This document shows positions 3,761-61,974 of a DNA stretch of 64,000 bases, one piece after another (the first letter of the stretch is position 1; every line of letters begins with the position of its first letter). Location of the stretch: the NCBI RefSeq assembly GCF_018977255.1, contig NW_024704760.1, forward strand, positions 10,912,001-10,976,000, in the 5' to 3' direction. Under the pieces are notes generated by a model. The model worked only from the letters and a program-made list of their open reading frames with translations, ran no database searches and was not told where the DNA came from. This DNA is from Callorhinchus milii (Eukaryota). The position numbers were made by a program, and so were the translations under genes.

Positions 3761-4071
3761 TCTGATCCAGAGCATTACTAACTGGAAACATACTTCATTC
3801 AGATCTTATAAATGGCCAAATTTCTGCCTGGATGAATGGCTAGTAGCAGGATTAGACTAGCAACTGTTGGGGTACACAGCATAGGTTTGTTGATGTAGGT
3901 AGGGAGGGACAATAAGAGATGGTGCAACAATCACTGTGCAATTCAGTTACTGTGTTGGTTTTGACTGATTCAAATCATTATAAAAGATGTTGGTAAGCGT
4001 CATGTGAAGGGTCACTGGATTTGACGACTCGTTATAATTTTGTAAAGCGTTGATAGACAAAAGCCACTTAC

Positions 4072-4233
4072 TCATTATAAACTTTCCACGCGTTTGAGCC
4101 ATGCTGGGACATTAGCTCCAGGTTCTCGATCCTCACGGCCTGATGCTCCAGCTGTGCCATTGAGTTGTTGACGCACTCCTGCCAGGCGGTGATGTCGTTC
4201 TTCTGTCCTGAGGATGGGGCAGGCAGCTCATAC
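4072..4233 (-). CDS. BCAS2: BCAS2 (SPF27) coding exon 4
   Basis: 162 nt, cag|GTATGAG...AATGA|gtaagt; [53 protein letters not shown] matches vertebrate BCAS2. Confidence 0.97.
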
Positions 4234-4359
4234 CTGTAAGGGGCAAGAGACAGGAGCAAGAAGGTAGGAAAGAAAATCAATCTAACTGAAGGAACGCAGA
4301 ATGGGCACCAAGCCGCACAATTGTGTTCAGTGTTCAGTGAGAGTGAAGCAAACAGCAAC

Positions 4360-4660
4360 AAAATGACAATTGTATATCACCTTTCACAGCGGGAGGATGT
4401 TCCAAGGCGCTGGACAGATAGAGTTATGGACCCGAGCTGGGGGTCGGGGTGGGGGAGGGTAGAGGGTAGGGGGGAAAGCAGGAAGATCAAAAGCACAGTT
4501 GAAGAGGAGGGTCTTGAGGTGGGTCCTGAAGGTGGCAAGGGAGGGGGCGAGACAGAGGGACAGCAGGATGGAGTTCCAGAGGGTGGGTGCAGAGTGGTGG
4601 AAGGCCCACCCGCCAATAGTGGGGCGAGCAAGGCGGGGGGCGTGAAGCAGGCCAGAGCCG
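4360..4660 (-). mobile_element. L2 LINE 3' fragment
   Basis: GGWAFHHSAPTLWNSI-type L2 C-terminus plus the tail gcgccttggaacatcctcccgctgtgaaagg. Similar short L2 3' pieces lie at about 8690, 16400, 27040, 35380, 39580, 49200, 54650 and 57290. Confidence 0.85.
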
Positions 4661-5560
4661 TCACACCCCCTCATAAATGAACCACATTACTGAGTTGAAC
4701 AGACAAAGGAAAGTCTTGTGCTGAGTTACCTAATCCCACTGAGAATGCCTCTTCCCGCCTGCACTCCAGTCCCACTTGCCACCTGGACTCAAGTGCCAAC
4801 CAAATTAGGTGAGTTAATGGCAACTCAATGGCTGTAGATTGACAGTTATCTTTGATATCAGCAAAGGGGATGGATGCTTTGCTGCAATCTGCTGGACAGA
4901 ACAGCGCAGCACAGGTGGTGGTTTGGCTGGAATTCCACACTTACAATGCCACATAAGTTGGAAGGACATTTCAATACAGATTGTTATCATCACAAAAAGT
5001 ACTCAGAATAGATTAGTGTGCTGCATGGGGGAGAGTAGGAGGGGGAAGAGAGAGCGAGAGAGGAGAGAGAGAAAGAGAGAGAAAGAGTGAAGCGAGAAGA
5101 CTGAGAACTAAATAAGTATTTGGAAAAACTATTCCAAGTACAGGGACTTTACTGTCAATATCTGGTAACTATTTTACACAGAGTGGCTAAGTCAAGCTAT
5201 AGCTGTGGCACCAATTAATACACAATAAAATATAAAATGACATTTGTACAGCGCATTTCACGTCGGGAGGACATCCCAAGGCGCTGGGCTAATATTTCTA
5301 CAAAGAAAGCAAATGTTCATTGCAGTCAATGTCCTAAGTGATCTTTTGCTTCGGATACATTATTTAAGCAGCATATTGCATGAGTTAAGGTAAAGAGATT
5401 GGAAGGAAACATAAAACACCAATTACTGGTCATTTGAAGATTCAAGGACACATTTGAAGATTTGAACATAGAGCAAATTCAACACTAGCAAACTATATCA
5501 GAAAATAATTAAAAAGGACATTTCCAAATAACCACTTCAATACTAAATCTGTGGACTCAC

Positions 5561-5631
5561 CTTTTCATACTGAGCAGTTCCATTGGCTGCCGAGCTGCTA
5601 GACGCTCAAACTCATTCCTCATTATCTCAGT
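5561..5631 (-). CDS. BCAS2: BCAS2 coding exon 3
   Basis: 71 nt, gcag|ACTGAG...AAAAG|gtgagt; [24 protein letters not shown]. Confidence 0.97.
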
Positions 5632-7101
5632 CTGCAAAAAGTTTGGTTTAAATATACATTAATTCCTAATCACATACAATGTTTATGTAGTGCAGATTCA
5701 ATGCATTGCACAAGATGAAAAGGTGAAAAGATGAAAGGGTGTGCGCGTGCTAAACCTATATTTTCCATAATGGAGGTAACGCAAGAAGAAATGTGTAATT
5801 TTTGGCTTGTTTGTTGCTCTAAACAACACAATGTATAATCTTTCTAAAAGAAAGGTTTTACACAGTGGGTAATTAATGACTGGAACATTACCTGGGAAGG
5901 TGATAAGAGGCCATGGTACCCAATTCATTTAATCAACAGCTTGATGCTCGGGTCCAAATCCCCTGACTGTCCAGCGCTTGGGATGTCCTCCTGATGTGAA
6001 AGGTTGCTGTGTAAATGTAATTTGTTGTTGATACTGCAATGGGTGGGCAGCAGGATGGGTATTTTGGAATACTAAGGTCAAATGGAGAGCTTTCTCTATT
6101 GAAACCACTCTGTCAATTTGTTTGTCTTGTCCTGGCTGGACCTATGTTGTTATGTTTTTATTTAATATTGAGCAGGTACAGTTTCTGTAAATTTATCTTC
6201 AAACCATTTTAAAAAGGGAATCGAAGTAACAAGCCGTGAACCTATTGCCAATCCCATTAGCTTGAGCTAAAATATTCTTCTTCTACTCCCTACCAAAAAC
6301 TCACTGTCTGACCCATTTTTCCAAATGGTCACATGGATATAGAAAGCCCAATCTCTTCTAATACCTGATGCCTTTTGGCACATCCCATTCATCTCTGTCG
6401 TCAACACCAGATTAGAATAATAATCCATGCATCTGAGATAGAGCCTTTCCACATCAGGATTTACTGTACAACAACTTGCACTTCTATAGCGCCCTCCACA
6501 CAGGGCAGGTGGATGGTGGAGCCTGACTCCAAGCCGGGGGCAGATGGGGGGAGGGACAGGTGCCGGACACTACAGTGTCAGCACTACACTGTATTGTAAT
6601 GACAGCATTTCTTGGTAAAGGCGGCGGACAGTTTGCAGTGCTCCCCAAACAATGAAGAGAATGAGTGATTATCTGGGGATTTTCAACCAGGCCACTTCAT
6701 TCACTTTTCCAATAATACCATGAGATCTCATTGTCCACTTAAACAGGCAATGGGACCTGGGTTTAACATTTCATCTGAAGGACAGCACCTCCAACAATTC
6801 AGCGCTCCCCCATCTCAGCCTAGACTGAGAGTTTAAAGTTCTTATGTGGAATCTACAACCTTCTACCTCAGAGCCAAGCATGCTCCTACACTTTACAGTA
6901 AATCCTGTAAGAGGTTTTGATGATGTGATAGAATAGGCAAATATGGTAACATAAATTTAAACCCAGGGATTTCCTAGGATTTCTGATTGCTTCTGATGTA
7001 CCGATTTCTGTTAATGGAATGTATTAAAAGACTTGGACATCACTAAGAATGTAATGAGAAGATGCAGATGGCGTGTTCAGGCTACAGCTCCACATACTCA
7101 C

Positions 7102-7194
7102 TTCAAACGCCGAATAGTCAGGTGTAGGCAAATAGCTCAGGTAATTTTTCGTAGGTCGATATCGCCTGGTTTCTTCCTCCACCAGTGCAGCTGC
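7102..7194 (-). CDS. BCAS2: BCAS2 coding exon 2
   Basis: 93 nt, ttag|GCAGCT...TTTGAA|gtgagt; [31 protein letters not shown]. Confidence 0.97.
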
Positions 7195-12174: not shown

Positions 12175-12180
12175 ACCCCG

Positions 12181-15482: not shown

Positions 15483-15583
15483 TTATACGTAGATTCCTTC
15501 CTGGTTGAAGTTGGAGATCTGGAGATCCTTCACGTTGGCAGGATCCTGTTGACAATTGAGGGGCGTTGGCTGGAGTAGAAACT
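15483..15583 (-). CDS. RASSF7/8-family gene, last coding exon
   Basis: ctcctcag|AG TTT..., phase 1; EFLLQPTPLNCQQDPANVKDLQISNFNQEGIYV*, ending in the FNxEGIYV C-terminus typical of RASSF8. Confidence 0.9.
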
Positions 15584-15649
15584 CTGAGGAGAGAAGAGGA
15601 CAGGAGTGAAAGAATTAGATTGGTACATAACTGGTCCTCATACTATCAG

Positions 15650-17410
15650 AGGACCAATCTGTGCTAGCATTCTCACCTCTGAGAAGGAGGTTTGTGGTTC
15701 AAGGTCCATGTCAGGATGTTGAACTCACACTCTAGGCTGACACTCCAATACAGTACTTGAGAATTCTGAAATGTTGGAGGTGCCTTCCTTCTGATGAAAC
15801 ATTAATCTGAGGCCCTGTTTGACTGTTCATGTGGTCCGTTCATAAAGAGAAGGAAGTTTTTCCTGGTGTCCTGGCCAGCAATCTCACTTATAAAATTAGT
15901 TATTCACATGGTTGTTTGTGGGACATCGCTGTGTGCAAATTGACTGCTGCGTTCACCCACAAAACAGTCATGACACATCATGGTAAAGTCCTGTGAAGCA
16001 CTTTGAGACATCTCAACAATGTGGTAAGGCATGATACCCACAAAATACAGTCAATTCACTTTACTGTATATTCTGTGAAGTGCTTTGAGACGTGATAAAT
16101 ATATCAAATGCAAGGATTATTATTACACCAAAGGATTATTACCATTATTACTGTACTATTATTTCTTGGTTAGCTTTGCCATATTCTCAAGGACATGAAG
16201 GCATTTTAAAGTTAGAAAGCAGTTCTTTAAGTCAATCCACTGGGAGCAAGTGGAGCCTGGTAAGGAATGGCCATCTGGTTGCCTACAAATACCCAGTGAC
16301 TACACAAATCCTGTGAAGCACTTTGGGAAATGTGGTGTTATTAGATATAAATTCAAAAATTATTATTATTTGTAGGCAAGAGGCCCATTTGCAGCAATGT
16401 CACCCCAGACAGTAATAACAACAACTACAACAAATTGTATTTATACAGCACCTTTCACTTTGAGATGACGTCCCAAGGCATTGGACAGTCAATGGTTTGC
16501 ATCCGAGCTGGGGGTTGGAATCAAGAGGGGTGGGGGGCCAAGGTGAATGAGGTGGGAAGATGATCAAAGAGGAAGGCCTTGTGACAGGCCTTGAAGGACA
16601 CCGGGAGAAAGTCTCTTTTCCTTTCAAATAGGCTTTAGTCAGAAAGTTGTGTGTTCAAGCCCCATGTCGCGATTTGGACTCGCAAGGTCTAGACTGACAC
16701 TCCAATACAGTTCTGGGGTGTATTGCATTATTGGAATATGGCCCTTTGGATGAAACGTTAAACCAAGGTTCTGTCGGCCTGTTCAGATGGATGTTAAAGA
16801 TCCTGTGGCACTATTCGAAGAGTGAAGTGTGTTTCTCCCGATTCCTGGCCAACAATCCCCCAGATACATTTGATCATTCACTTCATGGTTGTTTGTGGGA
16901 CACTGCTGTGCCAAATTGGCTGCCGTGTTTGGGAGGCAGGACCTCAGTTTAACATCGCACCCAAAGGACAGCACCTCTATCAATGCAGCAATCCCTCAGA
17001 ACTGTATCGGAGTGTGTCAGCTTAAACGTGAGCTCACAGATCCCGACATGAGGCTTGAAAACACAACATTCTGACCTGGAGGCGAGAGCACGAGCAACAG
17101 AGCAAGATTGAGAACCCACTGAAACTAGTGAAGAAGCCTGTGGACAACTCTGTAGTAGTAGTAATAATAATAATCCTTGCATTTGTTATAGCACCTTATC
17201 ACGTTGTTGAGACATCTCAAAGTTATTTTTGAAGAGATTATTACCCACGGAAAAGTGATGCACCAATTGACTAACAACAGGGTTCCTACTTATTGCTCGG
17301 TAAACAGAGGCATGTGGAGTAAAGAAATTTGCCTAACGTTTCGCCCCACCCAGGAATTGAACCCGGGTCCTCGCAGAGCGAGTGCTCTCACCACTGAGCT
17401 GCAGGGCTCT
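15650..17410. mobile_element. Cluster of Deu-type SINEs and an L2 tail (family B + at about 15650-16150 and 16640-16930; minus copies at about 16945-17100 and 17165-17410)
   Basis: Repeated heads, cores and atcaaatgcaaggattatt tails. Confidence 0.8.
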
Positions 17411-17426
17411 TTCTGCATTTGCTCAC

Positions 17427-17559
17427 CTTTTCCCTTAGCCTGAGCGGGAGCTTCCTCTGAGGGTAGAATGCTGATCCTTGAGCCCGTGCGTTGAATGAAC
17501 TGCAGGAGGTTTATCTGTCGCAGGTCCTTGGTCACATCCTCCAGCTCCTGTTGTTTCCT
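17427..17559 (-). CDS. RASSF7/8-family gene, coding exon 3
   Basis: 133 nt, gatgcag|AGG...AAAG|gtgagc; RKQQELEDVTKDLRQINLLQFIQRTGSRISILP, homologous to RASSF8 [25 protein letters not shown]. Confidence 0.93.
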
Positions 17560-19189
17560 CTGCATCAGGAAAAGAAAAGCCGGCATGTCTTTGCGTTCTA
17601 CAACAGACTTATTGCAAGTGCTTGCACTTCCCTTCCAGGATTGTGTTGGGAATCGCTGCGATTAATGCAGAATCAATTGGTATTTAAAGTATTTAAGTTC
17701 AGATATTTAAACATCTCAAAGCATTTCACAGAATATACTGCAAAGTGAATTGACTGTATATTTTGTGGGCGAAACACGACAGCCAATTGCACACAGCAAT
17801 GTCCGTTGGGGAGTTGGGATTAAACAGGGTTGCGATAGTAGTTAATCTGTGCATTTGATATTAGCATTTGAGACTCTCAACAATGTGATGAGGTGCTATG
17901 TCAAATGCAAGGATTATTATTAGCATCTATAACTTCTCAAAATATTTCACAGTATTTACTGTAAAGTGTAGAGACTGTGTATTGGTATGCAAACACAACA
18001 GCCAGTTGCGCACAGCAATATCCCGCAAACAGCCTTGGACTGAGTGACCAATTTTGTTTGAGGGGATTGTTGACCGGGACATTCGAATAGTGTCATGGGA
18101 TCTTTAACGTCCACCTGATCAGGCAGACGGGACCTCGGTTTAACATCTCACCTGAAGGACGTCACCTCTGACAATGAAGCACATTCACAACACTGAACTG
18201 GAGGGTCAGCTACAAATTGAGCTCAGAAAGGTGGAAAAAGGGAGTAAAGGCTCACTGAACCTTCTCTTAATAATATTACTAGTGATAATAATTCTTGTAT
18301 TTGATATAGCGCCTTTTCACATCTTTGAGACATCTCAAAGCGCTTCACAGAATATACTGTAACAAATCAATCGTGGATTGAGTGTCCCTAATTTTTTTAA
18401 ACGTGATTATTACCCCCAGAAACACAACCTGCTCTCAGTTCCCACCTTCCTGGCGAATTTCAATGAAATCAAGTTCACTTGCAACAGACTCTTCTGCAGT
18501 CTTGTATAGGCCAGAAGTATGAACTTTGTGCATTGTTTGAAGTTTCTCTAATAAATAAAAACATCCTTGGCTGCTTAAACCTTCATGTGAGATTGTCTTC
18601 TGGTTACAGGCCCCCAGGCTCCTCTTCTCCTACCCCCTCCTCTCTCACCATCATCATGACCAAAATGAAACCAACCATCTGCTCCCTCGACGCCATCCCT
18701 AACTCCCAGCTCCACCTCTTTATGATATTATTATTGTTGTATGATACTGCAGTGTAGGAAGAGTTAAAGGTTCAAGGTCCGTGAATGTTCAGTGTGATAT
18801 TTAACATAACGACCTACCACCTGATTGCAACCTGACTGGCATTATCTCAGCTCCTCTCTGGCTCACACTGGGCACAGTAACCCTGCCCGCGAGGCAGATC
18901 TGTAACAGTGACAGAATGGTGGTCTCCGTCATTGCCGTGGCAATTCCCTTGGGAAGGGGGGGTGGGGGGCAGAGAGGAATAAAAGCATTCCCTGAATTGC
19001 TCTCCTGCTGACGTTTAATTGACAGCTCCGTGCTTCACGCTCTCTAACCCGATAAGGTTGTTCCATTTCGATGCATTAATTAAGCAAATGTGATTGAAGC
19101 TTGAGATAGTGTCAGGCTGTGGATTATGCTCATACACCAGAGGTAGTTCCACACAGACCATCACAGCTTTCTGTAAATCAAGTGGAGTC

Positions 19190-19850
19190 CAGTAGTGGAA
19201 TGGTTAGCATGCTCGCCTCGCGAGCGTAGAGGACTCAGGTTCGATTCCCGGGCAAGGCGAAGCTTTGTTTCTTTGCTCCACAGACCTCTGTTTACCTTGC
19301 GGTAAATAGGAATCCGGTTGTTAGTCGATTGGCAGATAGCTTTTCTGGCAGTAATAATCCCTCAAAAAAAATTTCAATCCACGTGTTTGTAGGACACTGC
19401 TGTTCCCAATTTCTTTATTTTCAGTACCAGCCTTTCATGCGGAATTCCATCAAAGGCCTCACTGAAATTCAGATATATAGCATCCACTGTCTTACCCTCG
19501 GCAAGCTCCTTTGTCACACAATCAAACAGAAACAGTAAATTAGTTTGGTCTGACCTCCCCTTCATAAACCCATATTGACTATATTTTATCATTTTATTAC
19601 TGTCTAGATGCTCCATGATTTTGTTTCCAACAAGAGTCTCTATAACTTTACCCACAATGGTAAATAATGGTAATAATCCCTTAAAAAACAATCCACGCGT
19701 TTATAGCGCATTGCTGTGTGCAATTCGCTGCTGCGGTTTGTGCACAAAATACACAGTCCCTGCACTTTACACAGTCCCTACACGCTCTTTGAGACGTCTC
19801 AACCATGTGATAATGCGCTATAATCAAATGCAAGGATTATTATTATTATT
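19190..19850 (+). mobile_element. Family A SINE interrupted by a minus-strand CR1 RT fragment (about 19420-19655)
   Basis: SINE head at 19190, CR1 segment QYGFMKGRSDQTNLL/IYLNFSEAFDGIPHERL, SINE core and tail resume near 19665. Confidence 0.8.
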
Positions 19851-20127
19851 ATTAAATTCATGTATTAGAAATCCTTGGGCCAATCTTCCTGCCTGTCTGC
19901 CTGTACAGTCAGATGTTAAAGATCCCACCACACACACCTCTTGAAAAGAGGTATTTCTGACCAACAATCCTTCAGATAAAACTGATCATGGTTGTCCATG
20001 GGACGTTGCTGAGCACAAATTGGCTGTCAAATTTAGTGTCAATCCATGTTTGTCCCTACACCTTAAAGATAAGCACTTTGAGACGTTTCACACGTTATAA
20101 GCGCTGGATCAGTTGTAAGGATTAGTG

Positions 20128-20420
20128 GAGTCCTGTAGCTCAGTGGTTAGAGCATTCGCTTTGCCAGCAAGAGACCTGAGTTCAATTCCAGGCAGAGGGC
20201 AAAACCTTGGGCAAGTTTCCTTACTCCACACAGAGCCTAATAATAATCCCTTCAAAACAATAATAAATTGGTTATTTTCGATCCACGACTGTTTGTGGGA
20301 CATTGCTGTGCGCGTTCGCCCACAAATATAGTCAATTCACTTTATAGTATATTCTGTGAAGCGCTTTGGGACGTCCTCCCGACGTGAAAAGCGCTTTATC
20401 AAATGCAAGGCTTATTATTA
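20128..20420 (+). mobile_element. Family A SINE, internally deleted subfamily
   Basis: ggagtcctgtagctcagtggttagagc head to gcgctttgggacgtcctcccgacgtgaaaagcgc tail. Confidence 0.9.
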
Positions 20421-21164
20421 TTCTTGTTGTTTTCCTGCACAGAGTGAGTTACTGAGACGGATCAGATGGGTATGCGATTGAGAAGCTCTCCAGTGCCCTC
20501 AACTGGTGAACTTGCTCAGATACCTTTGCCTGTGAGTGTCCAGAGACGGCTCGGTCACACAGCAACAACGTGATATGTACAGCGATGTCATGCAGGAGAG
20601 CGCCTCAGATGCTGTGACTGGTGTGCGGCAGCGGGTGGGGGGGGTGGGGGCGGTAAGGGGGTGAACATGTATTTAATACAGACCTCCACACAGCAGGATC
20701 ACCCCATCTCTGTATGCACAACCTTGTTGGAGCCAATCAGTGGCCCAGAGGTAAACGCACTCCAATTTCTGTCTCAACGCTCAGACCCACGGCTGAACTG
20801 CGTGTGTGTGTGTGTGTGTGTGTGTGAATGTCACAGCTCACACCTGATGACTGGGCCAGATGCTGCAATCACCCAGTGCCTGTGAAAGAATGCACCCCAG
20901 TGTGCCAGCCTGGGACAGTGCGAGCACCCTCACAGGGTCCAAGGTGCTACTCCGATGCAGGGCTGGGGCTGTGTTGCAGTGTCGGAGGTGCTGTCCTTTG
21001 GATAAACCCAGGTCCTGTGGGATCTTTAACATCCACCTGTCCAGGCAGACAGGCAAGAACATTGACCCAGCGATTCCTGCTTCATCAACATGAGTTGGTA
21101 GGAGTTGCACGGGTCTGTCTGGAGCTAAAAGTGAGATATGAGCACAGTTCACAGGTGCTAAGAT

Positions 21165-21300
21165 AATAATAATAATAATTCTTGCATTTGATATACCGCC
21201 AATCTACTGGTAACCGGGAGTAAGGAAACTTGCCTAAGGTTTTGCCCTGACCAGCTCTCACTTGCGAGGCGAGTGCTCTGACCACTGAGCTACAGGAATC
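21165..21300 (-). mobile_element. Family A SINE, head joined directly to tail
   Basis: Reverse head ctctgaccactgagctacagga and (aat)n tail about 60 bp from the RASSF large-exon donor. Confidence 0.8.
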
Positions 21301-21357
21301 CCCAAGGAGGAGGAACAGGAGCAGTTGGTGAGAAGCTGGTGTGACCGACCCACTGAC

Positions 21358-22244
21358 CTGTATTTCCTCTTGCGCCATCTCGACGGCCGCCTCCACCTCC
21401 TGCACCTCCTCCTCCAGCCTCAGGCCCTCCTCAGCCGTCACTCTCAGCTCTTCCTTCAACTCGAGGAGCTTGTCGGCGAGCTCCGCCCCCTCCCCAGTGC
21501 TCTGAGCCTCCCTGTGAGTCTCAAGAGCCTCCTCCAGTCCCCGAGCATTGCCCTCGCACTCCGCCAGCTTCTCCTCGCACTCCCTCAGCCTCGCCTCCAC
21601 CTCCTCCAGCTGCTGCCTCAGCTCCGCCCTGTGGAGCTCCTCTCCTTTCAGCTCGTTCTCCCAGAATTCCACCTGCTCGGCCCCTGGCCCTGGTCCCTGC
21701 AGACGGGCCGCCTCCTGGCTCTCCTCAGGCTCTTCCCTCGCTTTCAGCTGCTGGATTTCCCCCTCGCTGGCCTCCACCTGTGCCTGCAGGCTCTGCAGTG
21801 CCTCCTGCTGGCTGGCGAGGCGCTGGCTCAACCCCAGGGCCGTGTCCTCCCCCTCACCCTCCGGCGGGACTTCCTTCTCAGGCTGCTTGACCTTGACCTT
21901 GCATTCCCTGCCCTTGCCCAGGGATTCCAGCCACTCTCGCGCCCCTTCCGCAAAGGTCAGCGATTTCCTCTTGGGCTCCTTGGCGGGATGGTGGGCTTTC
22001 TCGCTCTTGTTGCGCAGCTTGGCCAGCGGGGGGAGGCTCTGGCGATGCAAGTTCCTCTCAGGCCCCCAAGCCTTGGCCACCGGGGCTCTCTGGCTGAGGG
22101 ATGGCCCCGTGCGGTTCAGGATCAGCTGCACCTCCTTGACTTGTTGCCCCCATTTACTCAGCGATGCCAACAGCTTCTCATCTGGGGTGAAATGCCTTTC
22201 AACGTCTTTCCGCTTCTCCTTCAGAGTGTACCGTCCCGGGCAGC
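21358..22244 (-). CDS. RASSF7/8-family gene, large coding exon 2 (RA domain end and coiled coils)
   Basis: 887 nt, ctacag|GCTGC...ATACAG|gtcagt; GRYTLKEK...LSKWGQ...VQLILNRTGPSLSQR...RQSLPPLAKLR...EPKRKSLTF...EFWENEL, all RASSF8/7 motifs. Confidence 0.95.
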
Positions 22245-22811
22245 CTGTAGGCGGGTGGGGGGGGGGTGGTGGGGGGTGGGGGGGGGGGGGGGGCGGCAGT
22301 GGGGGGAGCGGAAATGTGGAGGAGAGAGACAGAACTTGTCTTTATTGTGTTTTAAAAATAAAAGAATAATCGTTGCATTTAATACAGCGCCTTATCACGT
22401 CGTCGAGACGTCTCAAAGCGCTTCACAGAATATATAGCGGAGTGACTGTGTATTTTGTGGGTGAAACGCAGCAGCCAATCGCACACAGCGGCGTCCCTCA
22501 AATGGATTGAGTGACCACATTTTTTTTTTTAATTTTTTTTTTTTAAATGGTTTATCTTTGCATTATCAAAACATCGGTGCGGCCGGGGGCAAATAGTCAA
22601 CACAATTAAGCAAATGATCCAATTTATTGAACCGTCCTTGCATTTCCATTTGCCTTTGTTTGGTGGATGCTCCAGTCCTGGGTTGCACTGCATTGTCAGA
22701 ACTGCAGAAATTCACAGCCCGGCTGAAGCCCATCATGTCTGTGATGCTCTATTGGGAGACCATCCATTCGGTCCCATTTACAAGCCTTTTCCCAGGCTCT
22801 GCTGATATGTC

Positions 22812-23560
22812 AGCCTGGTGCAACGGTAGCCTCTCACCTCTGAGTCAGAAGGCTGTGGGTTCAAGCCCCACAAGGGAACGTGGAATCACATAATCTAAAA
22901 TGAGATTCCAATGCAGCGCTGGGGGTGTATTGCATTGTCCAAGGAACCGTCCTTCGGATGAAACGTTGAACCGTCTGCCTGTTCAGGTGGATGTTAAAAA
23001 AAACACTACTCAAAAAGAGAAGGGAGTTTCTCCTCCTGGTGTTTTGGCCAAAAATCCCCCCAAAAAACTGGTCACTCACTCCATGGCTGTTTGTGGGACA
23101 TTGCCGTTTCATCCACAAAATACACAGTCACTCTACTTGACAGTATACCCTGTGAAGCGCTTTGAGACGTCTCAATGACATGATAAGGTGCTATATGGAG
23201 TCCTGTAGCTCAGTGGTTAGAGCACTTGCCTCGCAAGCGAGAGACCTGGGTTTGATTCCCGGCAGGGCGAAATGTTGGGCAAGTTTCCTTACTCCAGACC
23301 CCTCAGTTTATTCAGCAGTGAGTAGGAATCCAGTTGTTAGTCAATTGGAGAATTGCTTTTTTTGGAGATAATAATTGCTTCAAAAAATTAATAAAACTAA
23401 TTTGGTCACTTCAATCCACGACTGTTTGTGGGACGCTGCTGTATGTAATTGGCATTTCGCCCACAAAATATAGTCAATTCCTTTACAGTATATTCTTTTA
23501 AGTGCTTTGAGACGTCTCAAATATGTGATAAAGCGCTACATCAAATGCAAGGATTATTAT
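22812..23560 (+). mobile_element. Tandem family B SINE (about 22812-23195) then full-length family A SINE (23197-23560)
   Basis: Two different tRNA-like heads, each followed by the same Deu core and tail. Confidence 0.88.
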
Positions 23561-23829
23561 AATACATTTTGATTCATAAAATGCCCTTCATGTCGGGAGA
23601 ACATTTTATTTATTAGATCATTGAAAGATAGTTTAGTCCCATTTCCTTGCTTTTTCTCCATTCCCCTGTAAGGGGGTAATGAAAATATTGGCTTAATGCA
23701 GTGTAATAATTGATCTCTAATGTAACCTGATCTGAAAGCATTCTCTCCCCCAACGAGCAGAGTCGGACGCTGGAAGATGCAAGTTTGTTGTGGAATTCAA
23801 CCTCACTGTGCGAGCCTAGGGATGGTTTA

Positions 23830-24150
23830 CGGGAGAGTCAGAGGGAGAGAGACAGAGGGAGGGAGAGAGACACAGAGGGAGAGAAAGAGAGAGACAGAGG
23901 GAGAGAGAGACAAGAGGGAGTCAGAGAGAGTCAGAGGGAGAGAGAGTCAGAGGGAGAGAGAGAGAGTCAGAGGGGAAGAGACAGGGGGAGAGAGAGAGTC
24001 ACAGGGGCGAGACAGAGGGAGGGGGAGAGTCGGGAGTGGGGGTGAGAGACAGAGGAAGAGAGAGACAGAGAGCGGCACAGAATGTGATTTGAACGACAAG
24101 GCAGCGACACAGAGGAAAGAGAGAAAGAAACAGAAGAGAAGAAGGAAGAG
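23830..24150. repeat. GA-rich polypurine low-complexity tract
   Basis: Degenerate gagagacagagg repeats. Confidence 0.9.
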
Positions 24151-24519
24151 ACAGATAGTAAACAAATAAAGAATCTGTGTCTTTTACGTTGGAAGGACAC
24201 CTCAAAGCATTTACTGGGAAGTGTAGTGACTGTGTATTTTGTGGGTAAACACGGCGGTCAATCAACACAGGAGTAAACAGTATGTTTTATATCAATGAAC
24301 AATATCCTAACTTACTCCAAAATATGTACGAGTAAAGACACAAAAATATGTCTGGAAACGACACAAAGGAGAGAGGACGGAAACCAGAACAAATCTAAGC
24401 AACAAACATCTGGGGAAAACACTGACCTATCTGCAAACAAGACCTCTGGTGTTCATTGGTTGCAGTGTGACCTCTCTTTCTCCGGAGGGAGCTGCAACCC
24501 TTAACAGGCTGCTTTTTAT

Positions 24520-24740
24520 TTGTTCAGCCGGGTGTCTGAGGTGTGCGGAAACCCATCACCGTGGTTAAGAGTCTCCAAACCAAGCTGGGAATTCCATGCA
24601 TCCCACCACACATGGAAATCCCAGAGATAGATGCTCTCTCCTTGGAGGGACGTATCCTGTTTACCAAATTCCTGAAAATTATTAGGAGCAGGTTGGCGAG
24701 AGCCAAGGTTTGGGGACCCCAGAGTGTGCGTTGGATACAA
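24520..24740 (-). mobile_element. Unclassified non-autonomous element with RTE-like 3' end (family R), 3' half
   Basis: Shares sequence with 29750-30030, 31870-32345, 34770-35230, 38060-38290, 48610-49150 and 59170-59290. Confidence 0.7.
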
Positions 24741-25455
24741 AGGAAGGACTGCAGTGGGAACTATTACTCTGTTAGTCTACTGCAGTATCTGTGACCTTCC
24801 ACAGAGGGAATAACTTCCACAAAGCCCAGGACTGCAGTGACTTTTAGATTGAACTGAAAGTTGCAAACAGTTGAAAATGTTTCAGATGTTTTCCAGAAAC
24901 ATTGTGAAGAAACATAATGAAAAAAATATTCCATTCCCCAGGGATGGTCTACAATCGTCTCCTTGGTCTCCTTGGAGGCTGAACTGGTTTCAAGGTGACA
25001 TGGCTGGCAATGGGATGTCGGAATCGAGCCAGCCCTCTGTGATGGTCTCTAGTCTGGTTCCTGAGCCAGGCAGGTCCGCAGTATCCCAGGACACTACCGC
25101 TCACAGCACAGCCCATCGGCAGGACCTGGAAGGACACAGCCCTAACACATAGGGTGGCCCTGTCTGGGTAAGCAGTGGGAAAGCTTGCCAGACAGCATAC
25201 AGCAAACGCTTTTCTGGGGGTAGTAAACCCTTTAAAAAAAATAATAATTTGGTCTCTCAATCCATGACTGATTGTGGGACATTGCTGTGCGCAAATGGCT
25301 GCTGCCTTTCGCCCACAAAATACAGTCATACACACTTTACAGTTTATGCTTTGAAACATCTCAACTGCGCGATGAGGCGTATATGACATGTAAAGATTAT
25401 TATTATATTTGTTACTATTATAAACATATAAACAGAGAGCAGACCCTGTCCTTAC

Positions 25456-25558
25456 CCATGGCTTGTGCCAGAGCGATGACCACCTCCTGACAGGTGGTGT
25501 TCTCGTTCACCCCACAGACCACCCGCTGGATTCCGTCCACCCACACCTTGAGCTCCAT
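25456..25558 (-). CDS. RASSF7/8-family gene, first coding exon
   Basis: ATG at 25558; [35 protein letters not shown], 103 nt, donor ATGG|gtaagg. The exon begins at acceptor tttgcag|C at 25672. Spliced CDS is 1224 nt = 407 aa plus stop. Confidence 0.96.
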
Positions 25559-48236: not shown

Positions 48237-48515
48237 TGCAGACCACGGTTTTCCCCTCTGGAAAACTGCTGTGTTGAACGTGGCAGCAGTAGGCGTCCTT
48301 GGAGTGGGGGGGGCTGGTGTCATGGTAGCTGGTGATCTGGTAGGTGCTGTCGTGGTTGGGGATAATGCCGGTGTTGGTGGTCTCGGGCACGTCCTGTCCC
48401 TCGTGGCGCCAAGTCACTCGCACATCCCGCGTGTAAAACCCCGTCACCAGACACACCAGGCGGTGCCCGAGGGAATTCACCATCTTAAGGGCTCTCACTG
48501 TCACCTTGGGCTTCA
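48237..48515 (-). CDS. MHC class I alpha3 (Ig C1-set) exon
   Basis: 279 nt, ctcag|TG AAG...TGC A|gtaag; VKPKVTV...LVCLVTGFYTRDVRVTW...DSTYQ...YCCHVQHSSFPE with C1-set C-W-C and GFY motifs. Confidence 0.95.
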
Positions 48516-48609
48516 CTGAGGGGGGCAAGAGGGCCAAGGTCAGGACAGCTCAGGGAAGGGGCTCGTGTTTAACCTCAGGAGGGGGGAGGTGCTAAGCGGG
48601 GCCTCGTTG

Positions 48610-49150
48610 GAGCCAAATTGGCTCCCAGGTGACCGTATGACAACCCAATATTGGAATCGAGCCAACCCTCGGAGACGGTCTCCAGTCTGGTTCACTGCAC
48701 CATGGGCACTGCTGCTCACCGCACGGCCCGGCTCCTCAGCAGGAACTTGAAGGGTAGACCAGTCACTGGGGGCAGTGAATCCTCCCCCTCACTCCCGTTA
48801 ACCTGAAAGCCAAAGCCCTAATGGGTAGGGTGGTCCCAGCCGGACAAGCAGCGGGAAAGCTGGCCAGACAGTGATACCAACGGCAAGCTCTGTGGTTTTA
48901 GCTGGTTAGACTCCAGCAGTTACCCCAATGCACACTCTGGGGTCCCCCCCAAGCCTTGAGTCTTGACAACCTGCAACTAATACTTTCTGGAATTAGGTAA
49001 ACAGGAAGTGTCCCTCCAGGGAGAGAGAGAGCACGTTCCATTCCAACCTTCTATCTCTAGGATTTTCATGCGATGCATGGAATTCTCAGCTCGGTTTGGA
49101 TACTCTTAAGCAGATGGATTTCACGTGTGTCAGACGCCCGGCTGACCCCC
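48610..49150 (+). mobile_element. Family R element, longest copy (about 540 bp)
   Basis: Contains both the 5' block (ggaatcgagccaaccc) and the 3' end (tcagacgcccggctg). Confidence 0.7.
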
Positions 49151-49545
49151 AAACAAATAGAGGGTGGGTGTGGGGGTGATTATTGGCTGTGCTGTGTGGT
49201 GAATTCAAAATCCTCGTCCTCGCCTTCAGCACCTGTCCAGGGCCTTGGGACATACTCCTGACGCCTGCTCCACCATCAGCGGTTGGGCCTTTAGCCTCTC
49301 TGCCCCCACCCTTTGGAACTCTATCCCACAGTCCCTTCACCTCGCCCTCTTTCTTGCCTCCTTCAAGACACGTCTCAAGACCCTCCTCTTCGACCGGTCA
49401 CCCTCCTACCCTCTACCCTCCACCCTCCCTGCCCTCCATGTTTCCTGATCCCAACCCCCAGCTCGGGACCAAATCCCTGACTGTCCAGCGCCCTGGGACG
49501 TTCTCCAGACATGAAAGCCGCTGTACAAATGTAATTTGTTGTTAC

Positions 49546-49821
49546 CTGTGCTGTCCAGTGCCTCCTGTTGCAGGTGTAGGTATTTGCGTAACCAGTTCAC
49601 ACAGATGCTCTCACTGTACGTCTTCTTGTACAGGTTCTCGGGCCCATTGCGATCCCACTTCTCTTTGGTGAGGCGGGCGATGGGCGAGGACGCCACCCAG
49701 GTCAGGGTCTCCATGTCAAAAGACAGCAGGTCGCGGCCGTTGAAGGCATAACTGCGGAAGCCGCGCACTGAACCATCCTCAAGCAGCTGACAGCCCGACA
49801 TGTACTGGAACACGTTCAGCC
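49546..49821 (-). CDS. MHC class I alpha2 exon
   Basis: 276 nt, gacag|GG CTG...ACA G|gtaac; FQYMSGC...YAFNGRD...TW...LTKEKW...Y...C.NWLRKY with the C101-C164 pair. Confidence 0.96.
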
Positions 49822-49904
49822 CTGTCCCCGGGAACCAGAGATACATAGTGTTACGCAGTGTTATACCGAGCTTTACACCAGCGTTTACTTCACCAGAATG
49901 ATAC

Positions 49905-50450
49905 CAAAGTTAAAAGGTTAAATCACAAGGAAAGTTTGCAAAACTTGTTCTATGTTCCCTTGAGGTTAGAAGGTTGAGGGTTGATCTAATTTAGGTTTGT
50001 AAAATAATAAAGGGATTTGATAGAGTAGATACAGAGAAACTATTTCCTCTGGTCGGGAATCCAGAACAAGGGGCGTCATCTTAAAATTAGAGACAGGACA
50101 TTTAGGAGTGAAATCAGGAGCAGTTTCTCACCCAAAGGGCAGTGGAAATCTGGAACTCTCTCCCGCAAAAGGCTGTGGATTATGGTTGGATCCATTCACA
50201 TTTTCAAGATTGAGGTGGTTAGATGTTTGTTAGGTCAGGGGATCAAGGGATATGGGCATAGGCAGGTAATTGGAATTGAGGTACAGATCAGCCATAACCT
50301 TATAGAATGGCAGAACAGGATGAGGGGCTGAATGGCCTACTCCTGTTCCTATGTCATCTGGTAAATCTCCTCTGCACCCTCTCCAAGGCCTTGATATGCT
50401 TCCTGTAATGTGGTGCCCAGAACTGGACACAATACTACAGCTGAGCCCTC
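49905..50450. mobile_element. CR1 3' end (+, to about 50353) followed by a short inverted CR1 piece
   Basis: ttagaaggttgaggggttgatct...ggctgaatggcctactcctgttcctatgt then ctctgcaccctctccaaggcc...gtgcccagaactgg. Confidence 0.8.
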
Positions 50451-50943
50451 ACGTATCACGTCAGGAGGACCTCCCAAAGCCCTTCACAGAAATTGCAACA
50501 CTCCCAGCCCAGAGCTGCATTTGAGCATCAGTCAGACGATGTGATGGCAAGTCCCAGTGCGCTGAGGGGGTGTTGGGGGGGGAATTGTCATTGTCAGAGA
50601 TGCCGTCCTTCAGATGAGCTATAAAACAAGTCTGCCTGTTCCGGTGGATGTCAAAGATCCCGCGGCGTTGTTAGAAAAGGGAAGGGAATTCCTCCCTCCC
50701 AGGGTCCTGGCCAACAATCTCCCAAGTAAAAAATAATTGGTCATTCACTCCATGGCTGTTGGTGGGGCAATTGCTGGGGGGATTTGTGCTGCCCATATGC
50801 ACCTTTCTGACTCCAAGTGAGAGCGCGACCACTGAACCCAACTGACACCCAAACAACAACAATAAATTGCCCTGATGAAGCCCTTGGTGTTGGGGGGGGA
50901 CCCCTCCGAGGGTGAACTGGGGGTGAGGGATGGAGAGACCAAC

Positions 50944-51204
50944 CTGTGTTGATGTTACTGCGTCGCATGGCAATCTTGACGTTGGCCAGGTAGAGTTTCT
51001 GTCTCTCGCTCAGTTTGACAGTCTCGCTCTCCCACTCGTCGGGCTTCAGTGCCTCCCCCATCCAGGGCTGTGTGGGACGGTTGTGGGGCCTCTCGCTGTC
51101 ATAGCGCGTGATCTGTACATCATCCAACATCCCCACGTGGGAGAAGGTGGGCAACGTATTATTGCTATACATCGCCGTGTAGTAATAACGCAGAGAGTGC
51201 GGCT
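50944..51204 (-). CDS. MHC class I alpha1 exon
   Basis: 261 nt, ttacag|AG CCG...ACA G|gttgg; KPHSLRYYYTAM...VGMLDDVQITRYDS...QPWM...W...AMRRSN. Confidence 0.96.
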
Positions 51205-51530: not shown

Positions 51531-51539
51531 ACACACAAT

Positions 51540-58606: not shown

Positions 58607-58765
58607 TTACTCAGAGACTTTTAAGCCTTCCATGATCAGGTTCAGTTCATAGCAGAGGGTTTCATAGCGGTAAGCCATCCGAATCTGAGACACGTTTGTC
58701 TTCTGAATGCTGTTACCTTCCGGGCCCTCCTTACGGTAGTTAGGTCCCAGGAATTTGATCTTCTC
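58607..58765 (-). CDS. AMPD1: AMP deaminase 1, last coding exon
   Basis: gacag|GAG; [52 protein letters not shown], 159 nt. Confidence 0.95.
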
Positions 58766-59744
58766 CTGTCAGGCAAGAGTGAAAGGGTAGAGGTTGAAGT
58801 TACAGAAGGAGACAGACAGACAGGTCGTGAGGTGCATTAGGAATCCAGGACCTGCTGTGTTAGAGAGCTGGCACTAAGGGTTAGCAGCTGCACAGAGAAT
58901 TATTACAGAAAAGATATGATCAACCAAGGTAGAAGATGCTCCAGCAGAGCTGGGGGGAGCTTCCCATTGTCAGATGTTCCATCCTTCGTTTTATTTTTGG
59001 TCTGATACACACAGAAACCCACCTAGACATGGAAATATCGCCCACGTTCGCCCACAAATATACAGTCAATTCACTTTACAGTGTGTTCTGTGAAGCGCTT
59101 TGGGACGTCCTCCTGACGTGAAAAGCGCTATATCAAATGCAAGGATTATTATTATTATTATTATTATAAATCCCAGAGATAGGTTGTTGGAATGGAATGC
59201 GCTCTCTCTCTCTCTCTCTCTCTCCCTGGAGGGAAGCAGCACTTACCTAATTCTGAAATGTATTAGGCGCAGGTTGGCAAGAGCCAAGGCTTGGGTACTA
59301 GGTTATATATGCAATATATGGTTAGTTCAAATCCACAAAGGTCTGATCGAGATGTTTTAACATCAAGGCTATGGTTGGAATTCTTCAGGAATATTTTAGA
59401 TTTCTTTTAATATAGAAATAGTCGCCCTGTTAAAAGCAGCCCATCCCTCCCTGACCACCACCCACCCCCGGCAAACCTCTGCCCATTGCTAAACTTCCCA
59501 ACTGGGCCACAAAATACACAGTCAGTTCACTTTTCAGTATGTTCTGTGACGTGCTTTGAGACGATGAAGTCTCAGCAACATGATAAGGCTATAACATATG
59601 CACGGATTTTTATTGTAACTCTCTCCGGGAGAGATTTCTGGAAGATAATATTGCTTTTCATATCAGAAGCTGATTATTGTAATTCAGTTGTCACGGTTTC
59701 TGATTGAGAACATTTCAGGAAGGAAGTAATAATAATAATAATAA

Positions 59745-60012
59745 TCCTTGCATTTGATATAGCGCTTTTCACGTCTTCTAAACGTCTCAAAGCGCTTCAC
59801 AGAATATGCTGTAAAGTGAATTGACTGTATATTTGTTGGCGAACGTGGCAGCCAATTGCGCACAGCAATGTCCCACAGACAGTCGTGGATTGAAAATGTC
59901 CAATTTATTATTGTTTTTGGTTTTGGAGGGATTATTATTAGGCTCTGTGTGGAGTAAGGAAACTTGCCCGAGGTTTCACCCTCTGCCTGGAATTGAACTC
60001 AGGTCTCTCACT
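59745..60012 (-). mobile_element. Family A SINE, young subfamily (5' truncated)
   Basis: Shares the diagnostic ttattgtttttggttttggagggattattattaggctctgtg segment with 51540-51860. Confidence 0.9.
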
Positions 60013-60469
60013 GAGTAAAAGTGAGTATTAAAAGCCGGATGTGGGTTAGGTTGTATTTGGGTACGGGACACCTCTAGTCACAGGTACCTGATGTGTTGCT
60101 TACAAAGGAACAACATTGTAAGTGAATTGCACCAAAAGGACAAATTGATCACACCAGAGGTACCTTCTGCGTCACAAAGGGTGGTCAAACACTGCGATAC
60201 AGTGACACGACTCCTGGTAATTCTAAGTGACTAGCTCAGGGGCACTGAGGCCAATTGTAGCAACTCCACCTCCAGCCCTTGGTTCAGATCATCCTACTGT
60301 GTCCTGGCAAGTGTCTTAGTGATGTTTTCTTGATTCACGAGACTATCAAGGACCCCCCAACCCCACACTCAAATAAAGCAGCTACACATTGAGCTGAAAC
60401 ACGAGGGGGTCTGTGGTGTAGGAAGCACTGAATACGTTGTGTAGGACTAACTATGCCGACAGGAAGTAC

Positions 60470-60580
60470 CTGCTCAGAGAAGCCACTCTGCAGGACGCTG
60501 TTTCGGGCGATCTCACACATGTCACAGGTGCTCAGCTTGAAGACCTGGGCTGCGATGGCATACTCCTCCATCAGAGGTTC
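60470..60580 (-). CDS. AMPD1: AMP deaminase 1, penultimate exon
   Basis: 111 nt, gacag|GAA...CAG|gtact; [37 protein letters not shown]. Confidence 0.96.
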
Positions 60581-60639
60581 CTGTCAACAGACAACACACG
60601 TTTACCATCGTCGATCCACGCTGAAATCAGACAGTTAAC

Positions 60640-61941: not shown

Positions 61942-61974
61942 CTGGAGGGACACAGCAGCTTGGTCAGCCTTAAT

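What the first reader, a model, noticed from the sequence alone, without database searches (positions are those of the whole stretch)
15483..25558. Probable third RASSF7/8 paralogue in the NRAS paralogon
Seen: a complete 407-aa N-terminal RA-domain protein with four coding exons (103, 887, 133, 101 nt) and the FNxEGIYV terminus. The termini resemble RASSF8, but the coiled-coil middle is very divergent. Established: RASSF7 lies by HRAS and RASSF8 by KRAS; mammals have no such gene by NRAS. Inference: its position between BCAS2 and AMPD1 makes it the missing NRAS-linked ohnologue from whole-genome duplication, lost in mammals. It may correspond to an extra fish RASSF gene (I recall the name rassf11 but have not verified it).
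Basis: partly seen in the sequence, partly recalled or inferred. Interest (0 to 1): 0.72.

Follow-up and report, generated by a model that had tools for sequence, protein, structure and literature searches.

The report
Elephant-shark rassf11, the NRAS-linked RASSF7/8 paralogue
The window holds an intact four-exon gene for a third RASSF7/8-type adaptor protein lying in the NRAS neighbourhood of the elephant shark; it is the gene that fish databases already call rassf11, it is old (present in sharks, coelacanth, lungfish and ray-finned fishes), and no land vertebrate turned up in its clade.

Summary
On the minus strand, four GT-AG exons of 103, 887, 133 and 101 nt encode a 407-aa protein ending FNQEGIYV. 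The protein has an N-terminal RA domain and a long coiled coil.

The window is Callorhinchus milii, and the gene is already in RefSeq as "RASSF8-like" (XP_007908422.1).

A maximum-likelihood tree gives three jawed-vertebrate clades, each with its own C. milii member:
- RASSF7 (100/99)
- RASSF8 (100/98)
- a third clade (100/100) holding the window gene plus sharks, rays, coelacanth, lungfish, bichir, sturgeon, bowfin, gar and teleosts

Members of the third clade are named rassf11 by UniProt (Tetraodon) and NCBI (Alosa). No tetrapod falls in it.

Synteny places the clade in the NRAS block:
- C. milii and sawfish: AMPD1 … rassf11 → BCAS2
- Shad: AMPD–NRAS–rassf11–CSDE1
- Smelt: AMPD–rassf11–CSDE1; bichir and bowfin: rassf11 next to CSDE1

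But the gene and its family are already annotated, so this is a correct identification and not a discovery. NRAS itself lies outside the window. Function as an ASPP/PP1-type scaffold is inferred by homology only.

The parts
25456..25558 (-). rassf11 coding exon 1 (103 nt, ATG at 25558; aa 1-34 plus 1 nt)
   Evidence: ATG start and GTAAGG donor; encodes the first half of the RA domain.
21358..22244 (-). rassf11 coding exon 2 (887 nt): rest of the RA domain, the disordered linker with the RQSLPPLAKLR and KRKSLTF motifs, and most of the coiled coil
   Evidence: acceptor ...cctacag| and donor |gtcagt; conserved motifs; helices 169-216, 221-284 and 288-355.
22181..22181 (-). Internal acceptor (ccccag|ATGAG) used by the older RefSeq model XP_007908422.1; it removes 21 conserved RA-domain residues
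   Evidence: Orthologues in sharks, coelacanth and all RASSF8 keep these residues, so the 887-nt exon is the conserved form.
17427..17559 (-). rassf11 coding exon 3 (133 nt): end of the coiled coil, with the ...LRQINLLQFIQ motif
   Evidence: cag| acceptor, |gtgagc donor..
15483..15583 (-). rassf11 coding exon 4 (101 nt including the TAA stop): tail ending FNQEGIYV
   Evidence: The terminus is shared with RASSF8 and with shark and coelacanth rassf11.
4071..7194 (-). BCAS2 (two exons recognised, inside ORFs 4071-4376 and 7027-7194); it lies downstream of rassf11 on the same strand
   Evidence: Pfam BCAS2 PF05700 at 1.6e-22 and 1.1e-3. The same rassf11 → BCAS2 tandem is seen in Pristis pectinata.
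58610..63658 (-). 3' part of an AMPD1-type AMP deaminase gene (exons inside ORFs 63407-63658, 61672-62010, 60338-60583 and 58610-58768); the gene runs off the right end of the window
   Evidence: PF19326 at 2e-33 and 4.8e-19; the best named hits are 'AMP deaminase 1-like' (82-89% identity), against AMPD3 at 78% and AMPD2-like at 70%.
48237..51204 (-). MHC class I-like gene between rassf11 and AMPD1 (alpha1 51204-50944, alpha2 49821-49546, alpha3 48515-48237). Not part of the finding; listed as a neighbour.

Best explanation
This is the Callorhinchus milii orthologue of the fish gene rassf11. It is a third member of the RASSF7/RASSF8 subfamily of N-terminal RA-domain proteins.

The three genes separated before cartilaginous and bony vertebrates diverged, with rassf11 sister to RASSF8. 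The most economical reading is that rassf11 is the copy retained in the NRAS paralogon after the early vertebrate genome duplications, as RASSF7 is beside HRAS and RASSF8 near KRAS. No tetrapod orthologue was found, so the gene was probably lost on the tetrapod stem. Ray-finned fishes keep it but have lost the last two coding exons and with them the RASSF8-type tail.

Shown here:
- the gene model
- the domain content
- clade membership
- separate RASSF7 and RASSF8 genes in the same genome
- linkage to BCAS2/AMPD1 in chimaera and sawfish, to NRAS in shad, and to AMPD and/or CSDE1 in shad, smelt, bichir and bowfin

Inferred by homology only: the protein is a non-enzymatic scaffold. It has a ubiquitin-fold RA domain with, as in RASSF7-10 generally, weak or atypical Ras-family binding. 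Behind that come a disordered linker carrying conserved short motifs, a roughly 190-residue coiled coil and a short conserved C-terminal motif. It probably acts like RASSF7/8 as a subunit of ASPP-PP1 complexes at cell junctions or the spindle.
For: - Gene model.
- RA domain.
- AF2 model: beta-grasp at 1-80 (pLDDT 83-91), helices at 169-355 (pLDDT 80-96), disordered linker and tail.
- Species and existing annotation.
- Careful ML tree with three reciprocally monophyletic jawed-vertebrate clades, and rassf11+RASSF8 joined at 98/91.
- A 306-sequence FastTree gives a 64-member rassf11 clade (support 100) with no tetrapod. Short fragments that match the clade are all teleost-like.
- The coelacanth rassf11 query finds no tetrapod hit other than RASSF8.
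- AU test against a chondrichthyan-only duplication: p = 8.7e-07.
- Names 'rassf11' / 'member 11'.
- C. milii RASSF7 (P0129) and RASSF8 (P0080).
- Synteny: window; Pristis rassf11 → BCAS2; Alosa AMPD/NRAS-type Ras/rassf11/CSDE1; Osmerus AMPD/rassf11/CSDE1; bichir and Amia rassf11/CSDE1.
- Shared intron position after codon ~35 with C. milii RASSF7.
- Motifs shared with RASSF8 (RQSLPPLAKLR, KRKSLTF, EFWENEL, NLxQFIQ, EGIYV).
- Family biology: RASSF7/8 are in ASPP/PP1/CCDC85 complexes (PMC6377682). [quoted passage not shown]
Against: - NRAS is not inside the window. Its position in C. milii, and the HRAS/KRAS linkage of C. milii RASSF7/8, could not be checked: there were no neighbours within the 10-kb flanks.
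- HRAS-RASSF7 and KRAS-RASSF8 linkage in human rests on established knowledge. The only support found here is the 11p15.5-like neighbours of cod-relative RASSF7.
- The slot differs between lineages (BCAS2 side in cartilaginous fishes, NRAS/CSDE1 side in ray-finned fishes), so at least one local rearrangement is needed.
- Absence in tetrapods is based on predicted protein sets, not on genome DNA.
- Cyclostome sequences are poorly placed (86/60 and 90/81), so timing relative to the two duplication rounds is not resolved.
- There is no expression or binding evidence for this protein. Function is by analogy, and the coiled coil is only 32% identical to RASSF8.
Confidence: 0.82

Rival explanations
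1. A recent, cartilaginous-fish-specific duplicate of RASSF8 that landed by chance next to BCAS2.
For: NCBI labels it 'RASSF8-like', and RASSF8 proteins are its best hits outside cartilaginous fishes.
Against: Orthologues exist in coelacanth, lungfish, bichir, sturgeon, bowfin, gar and teleosts, and they form one 100/100 clade with it. The AU test rejects grouping chondrichthyan rassf11 with chondrichthyan RASSF8 (p = 8.7e-07). Bony-fish orthologues lie in the same NRAS block.
Confidence: 0.01
2. It is simply RASSF7 or RASSF8 moved to a new locus, with the usual locus empty.
For: None beyond the similarity of the termini.
Against: C. milii encodes a distinct RASSF8 (P0080, XP_007907215.1). It also encodes a distinct RASSF7 (P0129, XP_007907537.2, on scaffold MU249848.1). 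Each falls in its own clade.
Confidence: 0.01
3. A true third paralogue, but made by a small-scale duplication of RASSF8 in the jawed-vertebrate stem and not by whole-genome duplication. Its place near NRAS would then be secondary.
For: rassf11 is sister to RASSF8 (98/91). The slot within the NRAS block differs between cartilaginous and ray-finned fishes, which shows the gene has moved locally at least once. Cyclostome placement does not fix the timing.
Against: The gene lies within a few kb to tens of kb of NRAS-block genes in every lineage examined. In shad the divergent NRAS(-)/rassf11(+) pair mirrors the human HRAS/RASSF7 and KRAS/RASSF8 orientation (the latter from memory). An independent landing beside the third Ras paralogue would be a coincidence.
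Confidence: 0.1
4. A decaying or non-functional copy in the elephant shark.
For: The terminal branch is long (0.59 against 0.17 for C. milii RASSF8). The coiled coil is divergent. No expression data were available.
Against: The 407-codon ORF is intact and all four exons have canonical splice sites. The RA domain is 87% identical to the shark orthologue, and family motifs and the C-terminal EGIYV are retained. The gene has been kept in lineages separated by more than 400 My.
Confidence: 0.05

Closest known systems
rassf11 of ray-finned fishes (UniProt H3CZX3 Tetraodon 'Ras association domain family member 11'; NCBI 'rassf11' Alosa pseudoharengus XP_076132444.1)
   Same: Same orthology clade (100/100). 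Same N-terminal RA domain, linker motifs and coiled coil. Same NRAS-block neighbourhood.
   Different: Ray-finned fish genes have only two coding exons. They lack the RASSF8-type tail (NLLQFIQ...EGIYV); non-teleost ones end in -T[AR]V. They sit between NRAS and CSDE1 and not between AMPD1 and BCAS2.
RASSF8 (human C12orf2/HoJ-1; RA domain structure 2CS4)
   Same: Sister clade (98/91). RA domain 71% identical. Same four-coding-exon layout, the same motifs and the same C-terminal EGIYV.
   Different: A separate gene exists in the same genome (P0080). The coiled coil is only 32% identical. There are diagnostic differences, e.g. LTFAEGAREW against LTFTGGAKGL and NLLQF against NLQQF. RASSF8 is KRAS-linked (from memory) and retained in tetrapods.
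RASSF7 (HRAS-linked N-terminal RASSF)
   Same: Same family architecture and the same first-intron position.
   Different: More distant clade. A separate C. milii gene exists (P0129).
Drosophila RASSF8 and the ASPP/PP1/CCDC85 complex
   Same: Pro-orthologue of the whole RASSF7/8/11 group. It provides the functional model of a scaffold recruited through the ASPP coiled coil to PP1 at adherens junctions (PMC6377682).
   Different: No binding data exist for any rassf11. Invertebrate sequences are the outgroup.
RASSF9/RASSF10 (the other N-terminal RASSF pair)
   Same: N-terminal RA domain plus coiled coil; the Pfam family PF21712 covers RASSF8-10.
   Different: Not recovered among the close relatives placed in the trees here; a different subfamily.

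Membership tests
N-terminal RASSF proteins (RASSF7-10 group) | RA (ubiquitin-fold) domain at the extreme N-terminus | tested here: met
   Pfam PF00788 3.4e-10 and PF21712 at aa 2-79. 2CS4 match at 6.4e-33. AF2 beta-grasp at aa 1-80 with pLDDT 83-91.
N-terminal RASSF proteins (RASSF7-10 group) | No C-terminal SARAH domain; a coiled coil follows the RA domain | tested here: met
   No SARAH family among the Pfam hits at E <= 0.1. Long helices at 169-216, 221-284 and 288-355.
RASSF7/RASSF8 subfamily | Shared linear motifs (RQSLPPLAKLR, KRKSLTF, EFWENEL, NLxQFIQ, C-terminal EGIYV) and a shared first intron after codon ~35 | tested here: met
   Alignment A1. Exon mapping of C. milii RASSF7 and shark rassf11.
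rassf11 orthology group | Falls in one clade with sequences named rassf11, to the exclusion of RASSF7 and RASSF8 | tested here: met
   100/100 clade including Tetraodon 'member 11'. Alosa 'rassf11' belongs to the P0127 cluster. 64-member clade.
rassf11 orthology group | Location in the NRAS gene block (AMPD1, NRAS, CSDE1, BCAS2) | tested here: met
   Window: BCAS2 and AMPD1-type AMPD flank the gene. Alosa, Osmerus, bichir, Amia and Pristis loci. NRAS itself is not in the window.
RASSF8 proper | Orthology to human RASSF8 (inside the RASSF8 clade; the only such gene in the genome) | tested here: not met
   Outside the RASSF8 clade (100/98). C. milii has its own RASSF8, P0080. AU test.
2R ohnologue triplet RASSF7 / RASSF8 / rassf11 | Duplications date to before the split of cartilaginous and bony vertebrates, and each copy lies beside a different Ras paralogue | tested here: inconclusive
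   Timing before the jawed-vertebrate radiation is shown, and NRAS adjacency is shown in shad. HRAS/RASSF7 and KRAS/RASSF8 linkage comes from memory of the human map. Only 11p15.5-like neighbours (BRSK, a RING-PHD gene) were seen beside Lota RASSF7. Cyclostomes are unresolved.
Ras effectors | GTP-dependent binding of a Ras-family GTPase through the RA domain | not testable with these tools
   The literature reports non-conserved Ras-contact residues and low affinities for RASSF7-10 (PMC8163975). Nothing is known for rassf11.
ASPP/PP1 complex subunits | Association with ASPP1/2 and, through it, PP1 | not testable with these tools
   Shown for RASSF7/8 and Drosophila RASSF8 (PMC6377682). For rassf11 it is an inference from homology.

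The most novel reading that the evidence does not exclude
All three Ras paralogons (HRAS, KRAS, NRAS) kept a RASSF7/8-type gene beside the Ras gene for more than 450 My. In shad, NRAS and rassf11 form a divergent head-to-head pair. This would mean the Ras / N-terminal-RASSF linkage is under selection, through shared regulation or functional coupling, and is not mere inertia. The tetrapod loss of rassf11 and the removal of its RASSF8-type tail in ray-finned fishes would then be informative natural experiments on that coupling.
Probability: 0.12. Interest if true: 0.5.

Novelty: already known. Interest (0 to 1): 0.3.

Why it matters
It tidies the RASSF family. Vertebrates ancestrally had three RASSF7/8-type genes, one per Ras paralogon, and land vertebrates appear to have lost the NRAS-linked one.

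Database names are inconsistent. The same orthologue is called 'RASSF8-like', 'RASSF8' or 'rassf11', and C. milii RASSF7 is itself labelled 'RASSF8' by NCBI. This can mislead orthology-based transfer of function from human RASSF8 to fish genes.

The cartilaginous-fish and coelacanth copies keep the ancestral four-exon, EGIYV-ended form. They are therefore the right comparators for asking what the C-terminal motif does.

No paper on rassf11 was found in the searchable library, so it is an unstudied relative of two cancer-associated scaffold proteins, and it can be studied in zebrafish. None of this overturns anything.

Tried and rejected
- **Literature on 'rassf11':** 4 hits. The two I read are text artefacts of 'RASSF1_1'; the other two were not read.
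- **Other literature searches:** 'rassf8a', RASSF7/8 paralogy and N-terminal RASSF phylogeny gave nothing on a third paralogue.
- **Context look-ups that gave no neighbours:** Hemiscyllium rassf11 (a 49-kb gene with nothing within 10 kb), C. milii RASSF7 and lungfish (gene too long, no DNA). Gar rassf11 was not on record.
- **Ras exons:** It found none in the window, smelt, bichir, bowfin, shark or C. milii RASSF7 loci.
- **DENND2C (which sits between BCAS2 and AMPD1 in human, from memory):** no non-repeat ORF in 8-15 kb, 26-48 kb or 52-60 kb looked like a DENN protein by eye. These ORFs were not put through Pfam, so this is weak negative evidence.
- **dN/dS:** not attempted, because chimaera-shark synonymous sites would be saturated.
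- **Pseudogene reading:** considered and rejected (intact ORF and splice sites).


Full report
**Observation**

The region was read on both strands and the gene model rebuilt. On the minus strand there are four exons:
- 25558-25456 (103 nt)
- 22244-21358 (887 nt)
- 17559-17427 (133 nt)
- 15583-15483 (101 nt)

All are bounded by canonical AG/GT sites. They join into a 1224-nt ORF of 407 codons that starts at an ATG and ends ...FNQEGIYV-TAA. None of the window's N runs (32505, 43804-44014, 44371-44592, 55475-55757, 55775-55906) touches the gene.

**What the protein is**

Pfam finds an N-terminal RA domain (PF00788, 3.4e-10; PF21712 RASSF8-10_RA) at aa 2-79 and no SARAH domain. The only solved relative is the RA domain of human RASSF8/C12orf2 (2CS4, 6.4e-33).

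An AlphaFold2 model built on a 24-sequence alignment shows:
- a confident beta-grasp at aa 1-80
- a disordered linker at 85-167 with one short helix at 132-144
- three long helices at 169-216, 221-284 and 288-355 (pLDDT 80-96)
- a disordered tail

The alignment shows the family motifs RQSLPPLAKLR, KRKSLTF, EFWENEL, NLLQFIQ and the C-terminal EGIYV.

Against the elephant shark's own RASSF8, identity is 71% in the RA domain, 47% in the linker, 32% in the coiled coil and 38% in the tail.

**Source and existing annotation**

The best database hit (4.8e-228) is Callorhinchus milii XP_007908422.1, "ras association domain-containing protein 8-like". It is identical to the window protein except for two points. 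First, a 21-residue gap is caused by an internal acceptor (ccccag|ATGAG at 22181). Second, the last residue is I there and V here. The window is therefore C. milii, and the gene is already in RefSeq.

**Is it a third paralogue?**

An exhaustive profile-free search of 1.84 billion representatives plus two word-indexed searches supplied sequences. Cluster look-ups supplied their names.

The main tree is a careful IQ-TREE analysis (LG+C20+F+G4) of 59 sequences. It is rooted on amphioxus, a hemichordate, a tunicate, an insect and a brachiopod. It gives three jawed-vertebrate clades:
- RASSF7 (100/99)
- RASSF8 (100/98)
- a third clade (100/100)

Each clade contains a C. milii sequence: P0129, P0080 and the window protein. 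Each splits into cartilaginous and bony vertebrates roughly as the species tree does. The third clade is sister to RASSF8 (98/91).

A 306-sequence FastTree recovers the third clade with 64 members (support 100). They are chimaera, sharks, rays, coelacanth, lungfish, bichirs, sturgeons and paddlefish, bowfin, gar and many teleosts.

An AU test rejects the alternative that the cartilaginous-fish copies are a lineage-specific RASSF8 duplication (delta lnL 117, p = 8.7e-07).

It fails on both counts.

**The name**

One clade member is UniProt H3CZX3, "Ras association domain family member 11" of Tetraodon (placed in the clade). Another cluster contains NCBI's "uncharacterized protein rassf11" of Alosa pseudoharengus.

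Elsewhere the same orthologue is labelled "RASSF8" or "RASSF8-like". C. milii RASSF7 is labelled "RASSF8" by NCBI and "7a" by UniProt. Naming is therefore inconsistent.

No paper on the gene was found. Of the four full-text hits for "rassf11", the two I read are artefacts of "RASSF1_1".

**Tetrapods**

No tetrapod sequence falls in the clade. All short fragments that match it are at least 52% (mostly over 70%) identical to teleost members.

With coelacanth rassf11 as query, every tetrapod hit is the species' single RASSF8.

This supports loss on the tetrapod stem, after the lungfish split. It rests on predicted proteomes and not on genome DNA.

**Synteny**

All the genes recognised in the window are on the minus strand:
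- BCAS2 exons at about 4.1-7.2 kb (Pfam PF05700).
- rassf11 at 15.5-25.6 kb.
- An MHC class I-like gene at 48.2-51.2 kb.
- The last four exons of an AMP deaminase at 58.6-63.7 kb. Its best named matches are AMPD1-like at 82-89% identity, against 78% for AMPD3 and 70% for AMPD2-like.

NRAS is not in the window.

In other species:
- Sawfish (Pristis): rassf11 is followed directly by BCAS2 on the same strand. The window's arrangement is therefore shared by chimaeras and rays.
- American shad: the order is AMPD(-), a 188-aa Ras(-), rassf11(+), CSDE1(-).
- Smelt: AMPD / rassf11 / CSDE1.
- Bichir and bowfin: rassf11 / CSDE1.

Every lineage examined therefore has the gene inside the BCAS2-AMPD1-NRAS-CSDE1 block. 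The slot differs: the BCAS2 side of AMPD1 in cartilaginous fishes, and between NRAS and CSDE1 in ray-finned fishes. At least one local rearrangement is needed.

For comparison, a cod-relative RASSF7 is flanked by a BRSK kinase and a RING-PHD gene. This matches human 11p15.5 (BRSK2, PHRF1; human map from memory). HRAS-RASSF7 and KRAS-RASSF8 linkage as such was not re-tested here.

**Gene structure**

Shark rassf11 and C. milii RASSF7 share the first intron position (after codon ~35) and the four-coding-exon plan of the window gene.

Bichir, bowfin, shad and smelt rassf11 have only two coding exons. In the alignment sturgeon, paddlefish, bowfin and gar rassf11 lack the NLLQFIQ...EGIYV tail and end in -T[AR]V instead. 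The chimaera, shark and coelacanth genes thus preserve the ancestral architecture.

**Mechanism**

Shown: the domain plan of an N-terminal RASSF scaffold.

Inferred from the family literature:
- RASSF7/8 and Drosophila RASSF8 join ASPP-PP1-CCDC85 complexes through the ASPP coiled coil, at adherens junctions (PMC6377682).
- RA domains of RASSF7-10 lack the canonical Ras-contact residues and bind Ras-family GTPases weakly (PMC8163975).

I therefore expect rassf11 to be a coiled-coil adaptor of that kind and not a classical Ras effector. I put roughly 60% on that step. Nothing here tests it.

**Rivals**

- A lineage-specific duplicate and a relocated RASSF7/8 are both rejected.
- A small-scale duplication of RASSF8 in the jawed-vertebrate stem that later came to lie by NRAS cannot be formally excluded. 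Cyclostome placement is weak (86/60 and 90/81) and the slot has moved. It would, however, require a coincidental landing beside the third Ras paralogue.
- A decaying copy is unlikely, given the intact ORF, splice sites and conserved motifs.

**Verdict**

It is a correct identification of an annotated but unstudied gene. The added value is threefold:
- explicit evidence for the three-clade, three-paralogon picture
- the apparent tetrapod loss
- the tail loss in ray-finned fishes

I score interest as modest.

Noticed in passing
window 48237-51204 (minus strand): An MHC class I-like gene lies between rassf11 and AMPD1. Three phase-1 exons were modelled: alpha1 51204-50944, alpha2 49821-49546 and alpha3 48515-48237. 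The 271-aa product's best PDB matches are MR1 chains (8bp6 6e-57, 196 bits; about 15 MR1 entries at 176-185 bits). They are only slightly ahead of classical class I chains (8kcv 182 bits; HLA/H-2 about 150 bits). The residue I recall as MR1's ligand-binding Lys43 appears to be Asn here (judged by eye and from memory). Leader and transmembrane exons were not located, and no phylogeny was done. A class I gene in the chromosome-1-type MHC paralogous region of a chimaera may deserve its own look.
   Followed up: partly
window 8000-15400, 25600-48000, 51500-60300: No DENND2C-like exons were seen between BCAS2 and AMPD1, where DENND2C lies in human (from memory). The interval is mostly SINE/LINE copies and satellites. 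This was checked only by eye on non-repeat ORFs, not by Pfam.
   Followed up: partly
window 22181 (minus strand) and 15486-15488: RefSeq XP_007908422.1 differs from the window gene in two ways. An internal acceptor drops 21 conserved RA-domain residues, which is a likely model error or a minor isoform. The terminal residue is Ile instead of Val, which is a polymorphism or an assembly difference.
   Followed up: yes
L001, L004, L005, L006 (Osmerus, Erpetoichthys, Alosa, Amia rassf11 loci): In all four ray-finned species mapped, rassf11 has two coding exons instead of four. In alignment A1 the sturgeon, paddlefish, bowfin and gar proteins replace the RASSF8-type C-terminus with an unrelated tail ending -T[AR]V, a PDZ-ligand-like ending.
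   Followed up: partly
L008 54753-54786 (Pristis pectinata): The sawfish rassf11 model (449 aa) runs 35 residues past the conserved ...EGIYV end and stops 33 bp before the BCAS2 gene call. This looks like a run-on annotation.
   Followed up: no
window 23199-23270 (+), with similar copies near 19190-19260, 20128-20200 and (reverse) 17330-17410, 21240-21300: ARAGORN calls a tRNA-Ala(CGC) in intron 1. It and several near-copies look like heads of a tRNA-derived SINE that, together with another abundant short repeat, fills the rassf11 introns.
   Followed up: no
window 44776-47781, 11452-11842, 33021-33236: A roughly 3-kb satellite of 20-22-bp units (about 130 copies, C/A-rich) lies next to two assembly gaps just downstream of the MHC-like gene. 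There are also a 37-bp x 10.6 proline-codon-rich array and a 28-bp x 7.7 array.
   Followed up: no
window 1034-1630 and 52260-53126 (minus strand): LINE fragments: an endonuclease domain (PF14529) and a reverse transcriptase (PF00078).
   Followed up: no
databases: Orthologue naming is inconsistent. rassf11 orthologues appear as 'RASSF8', 'RASSF8-like' or 'rassf11'. C. milii RASSF7 is 'RASSF8 isoform X1' at NCBI and '7a' at UniProt. Many bird RASSF7 entries are labelled 'RASF8'.
   Followed up: partly
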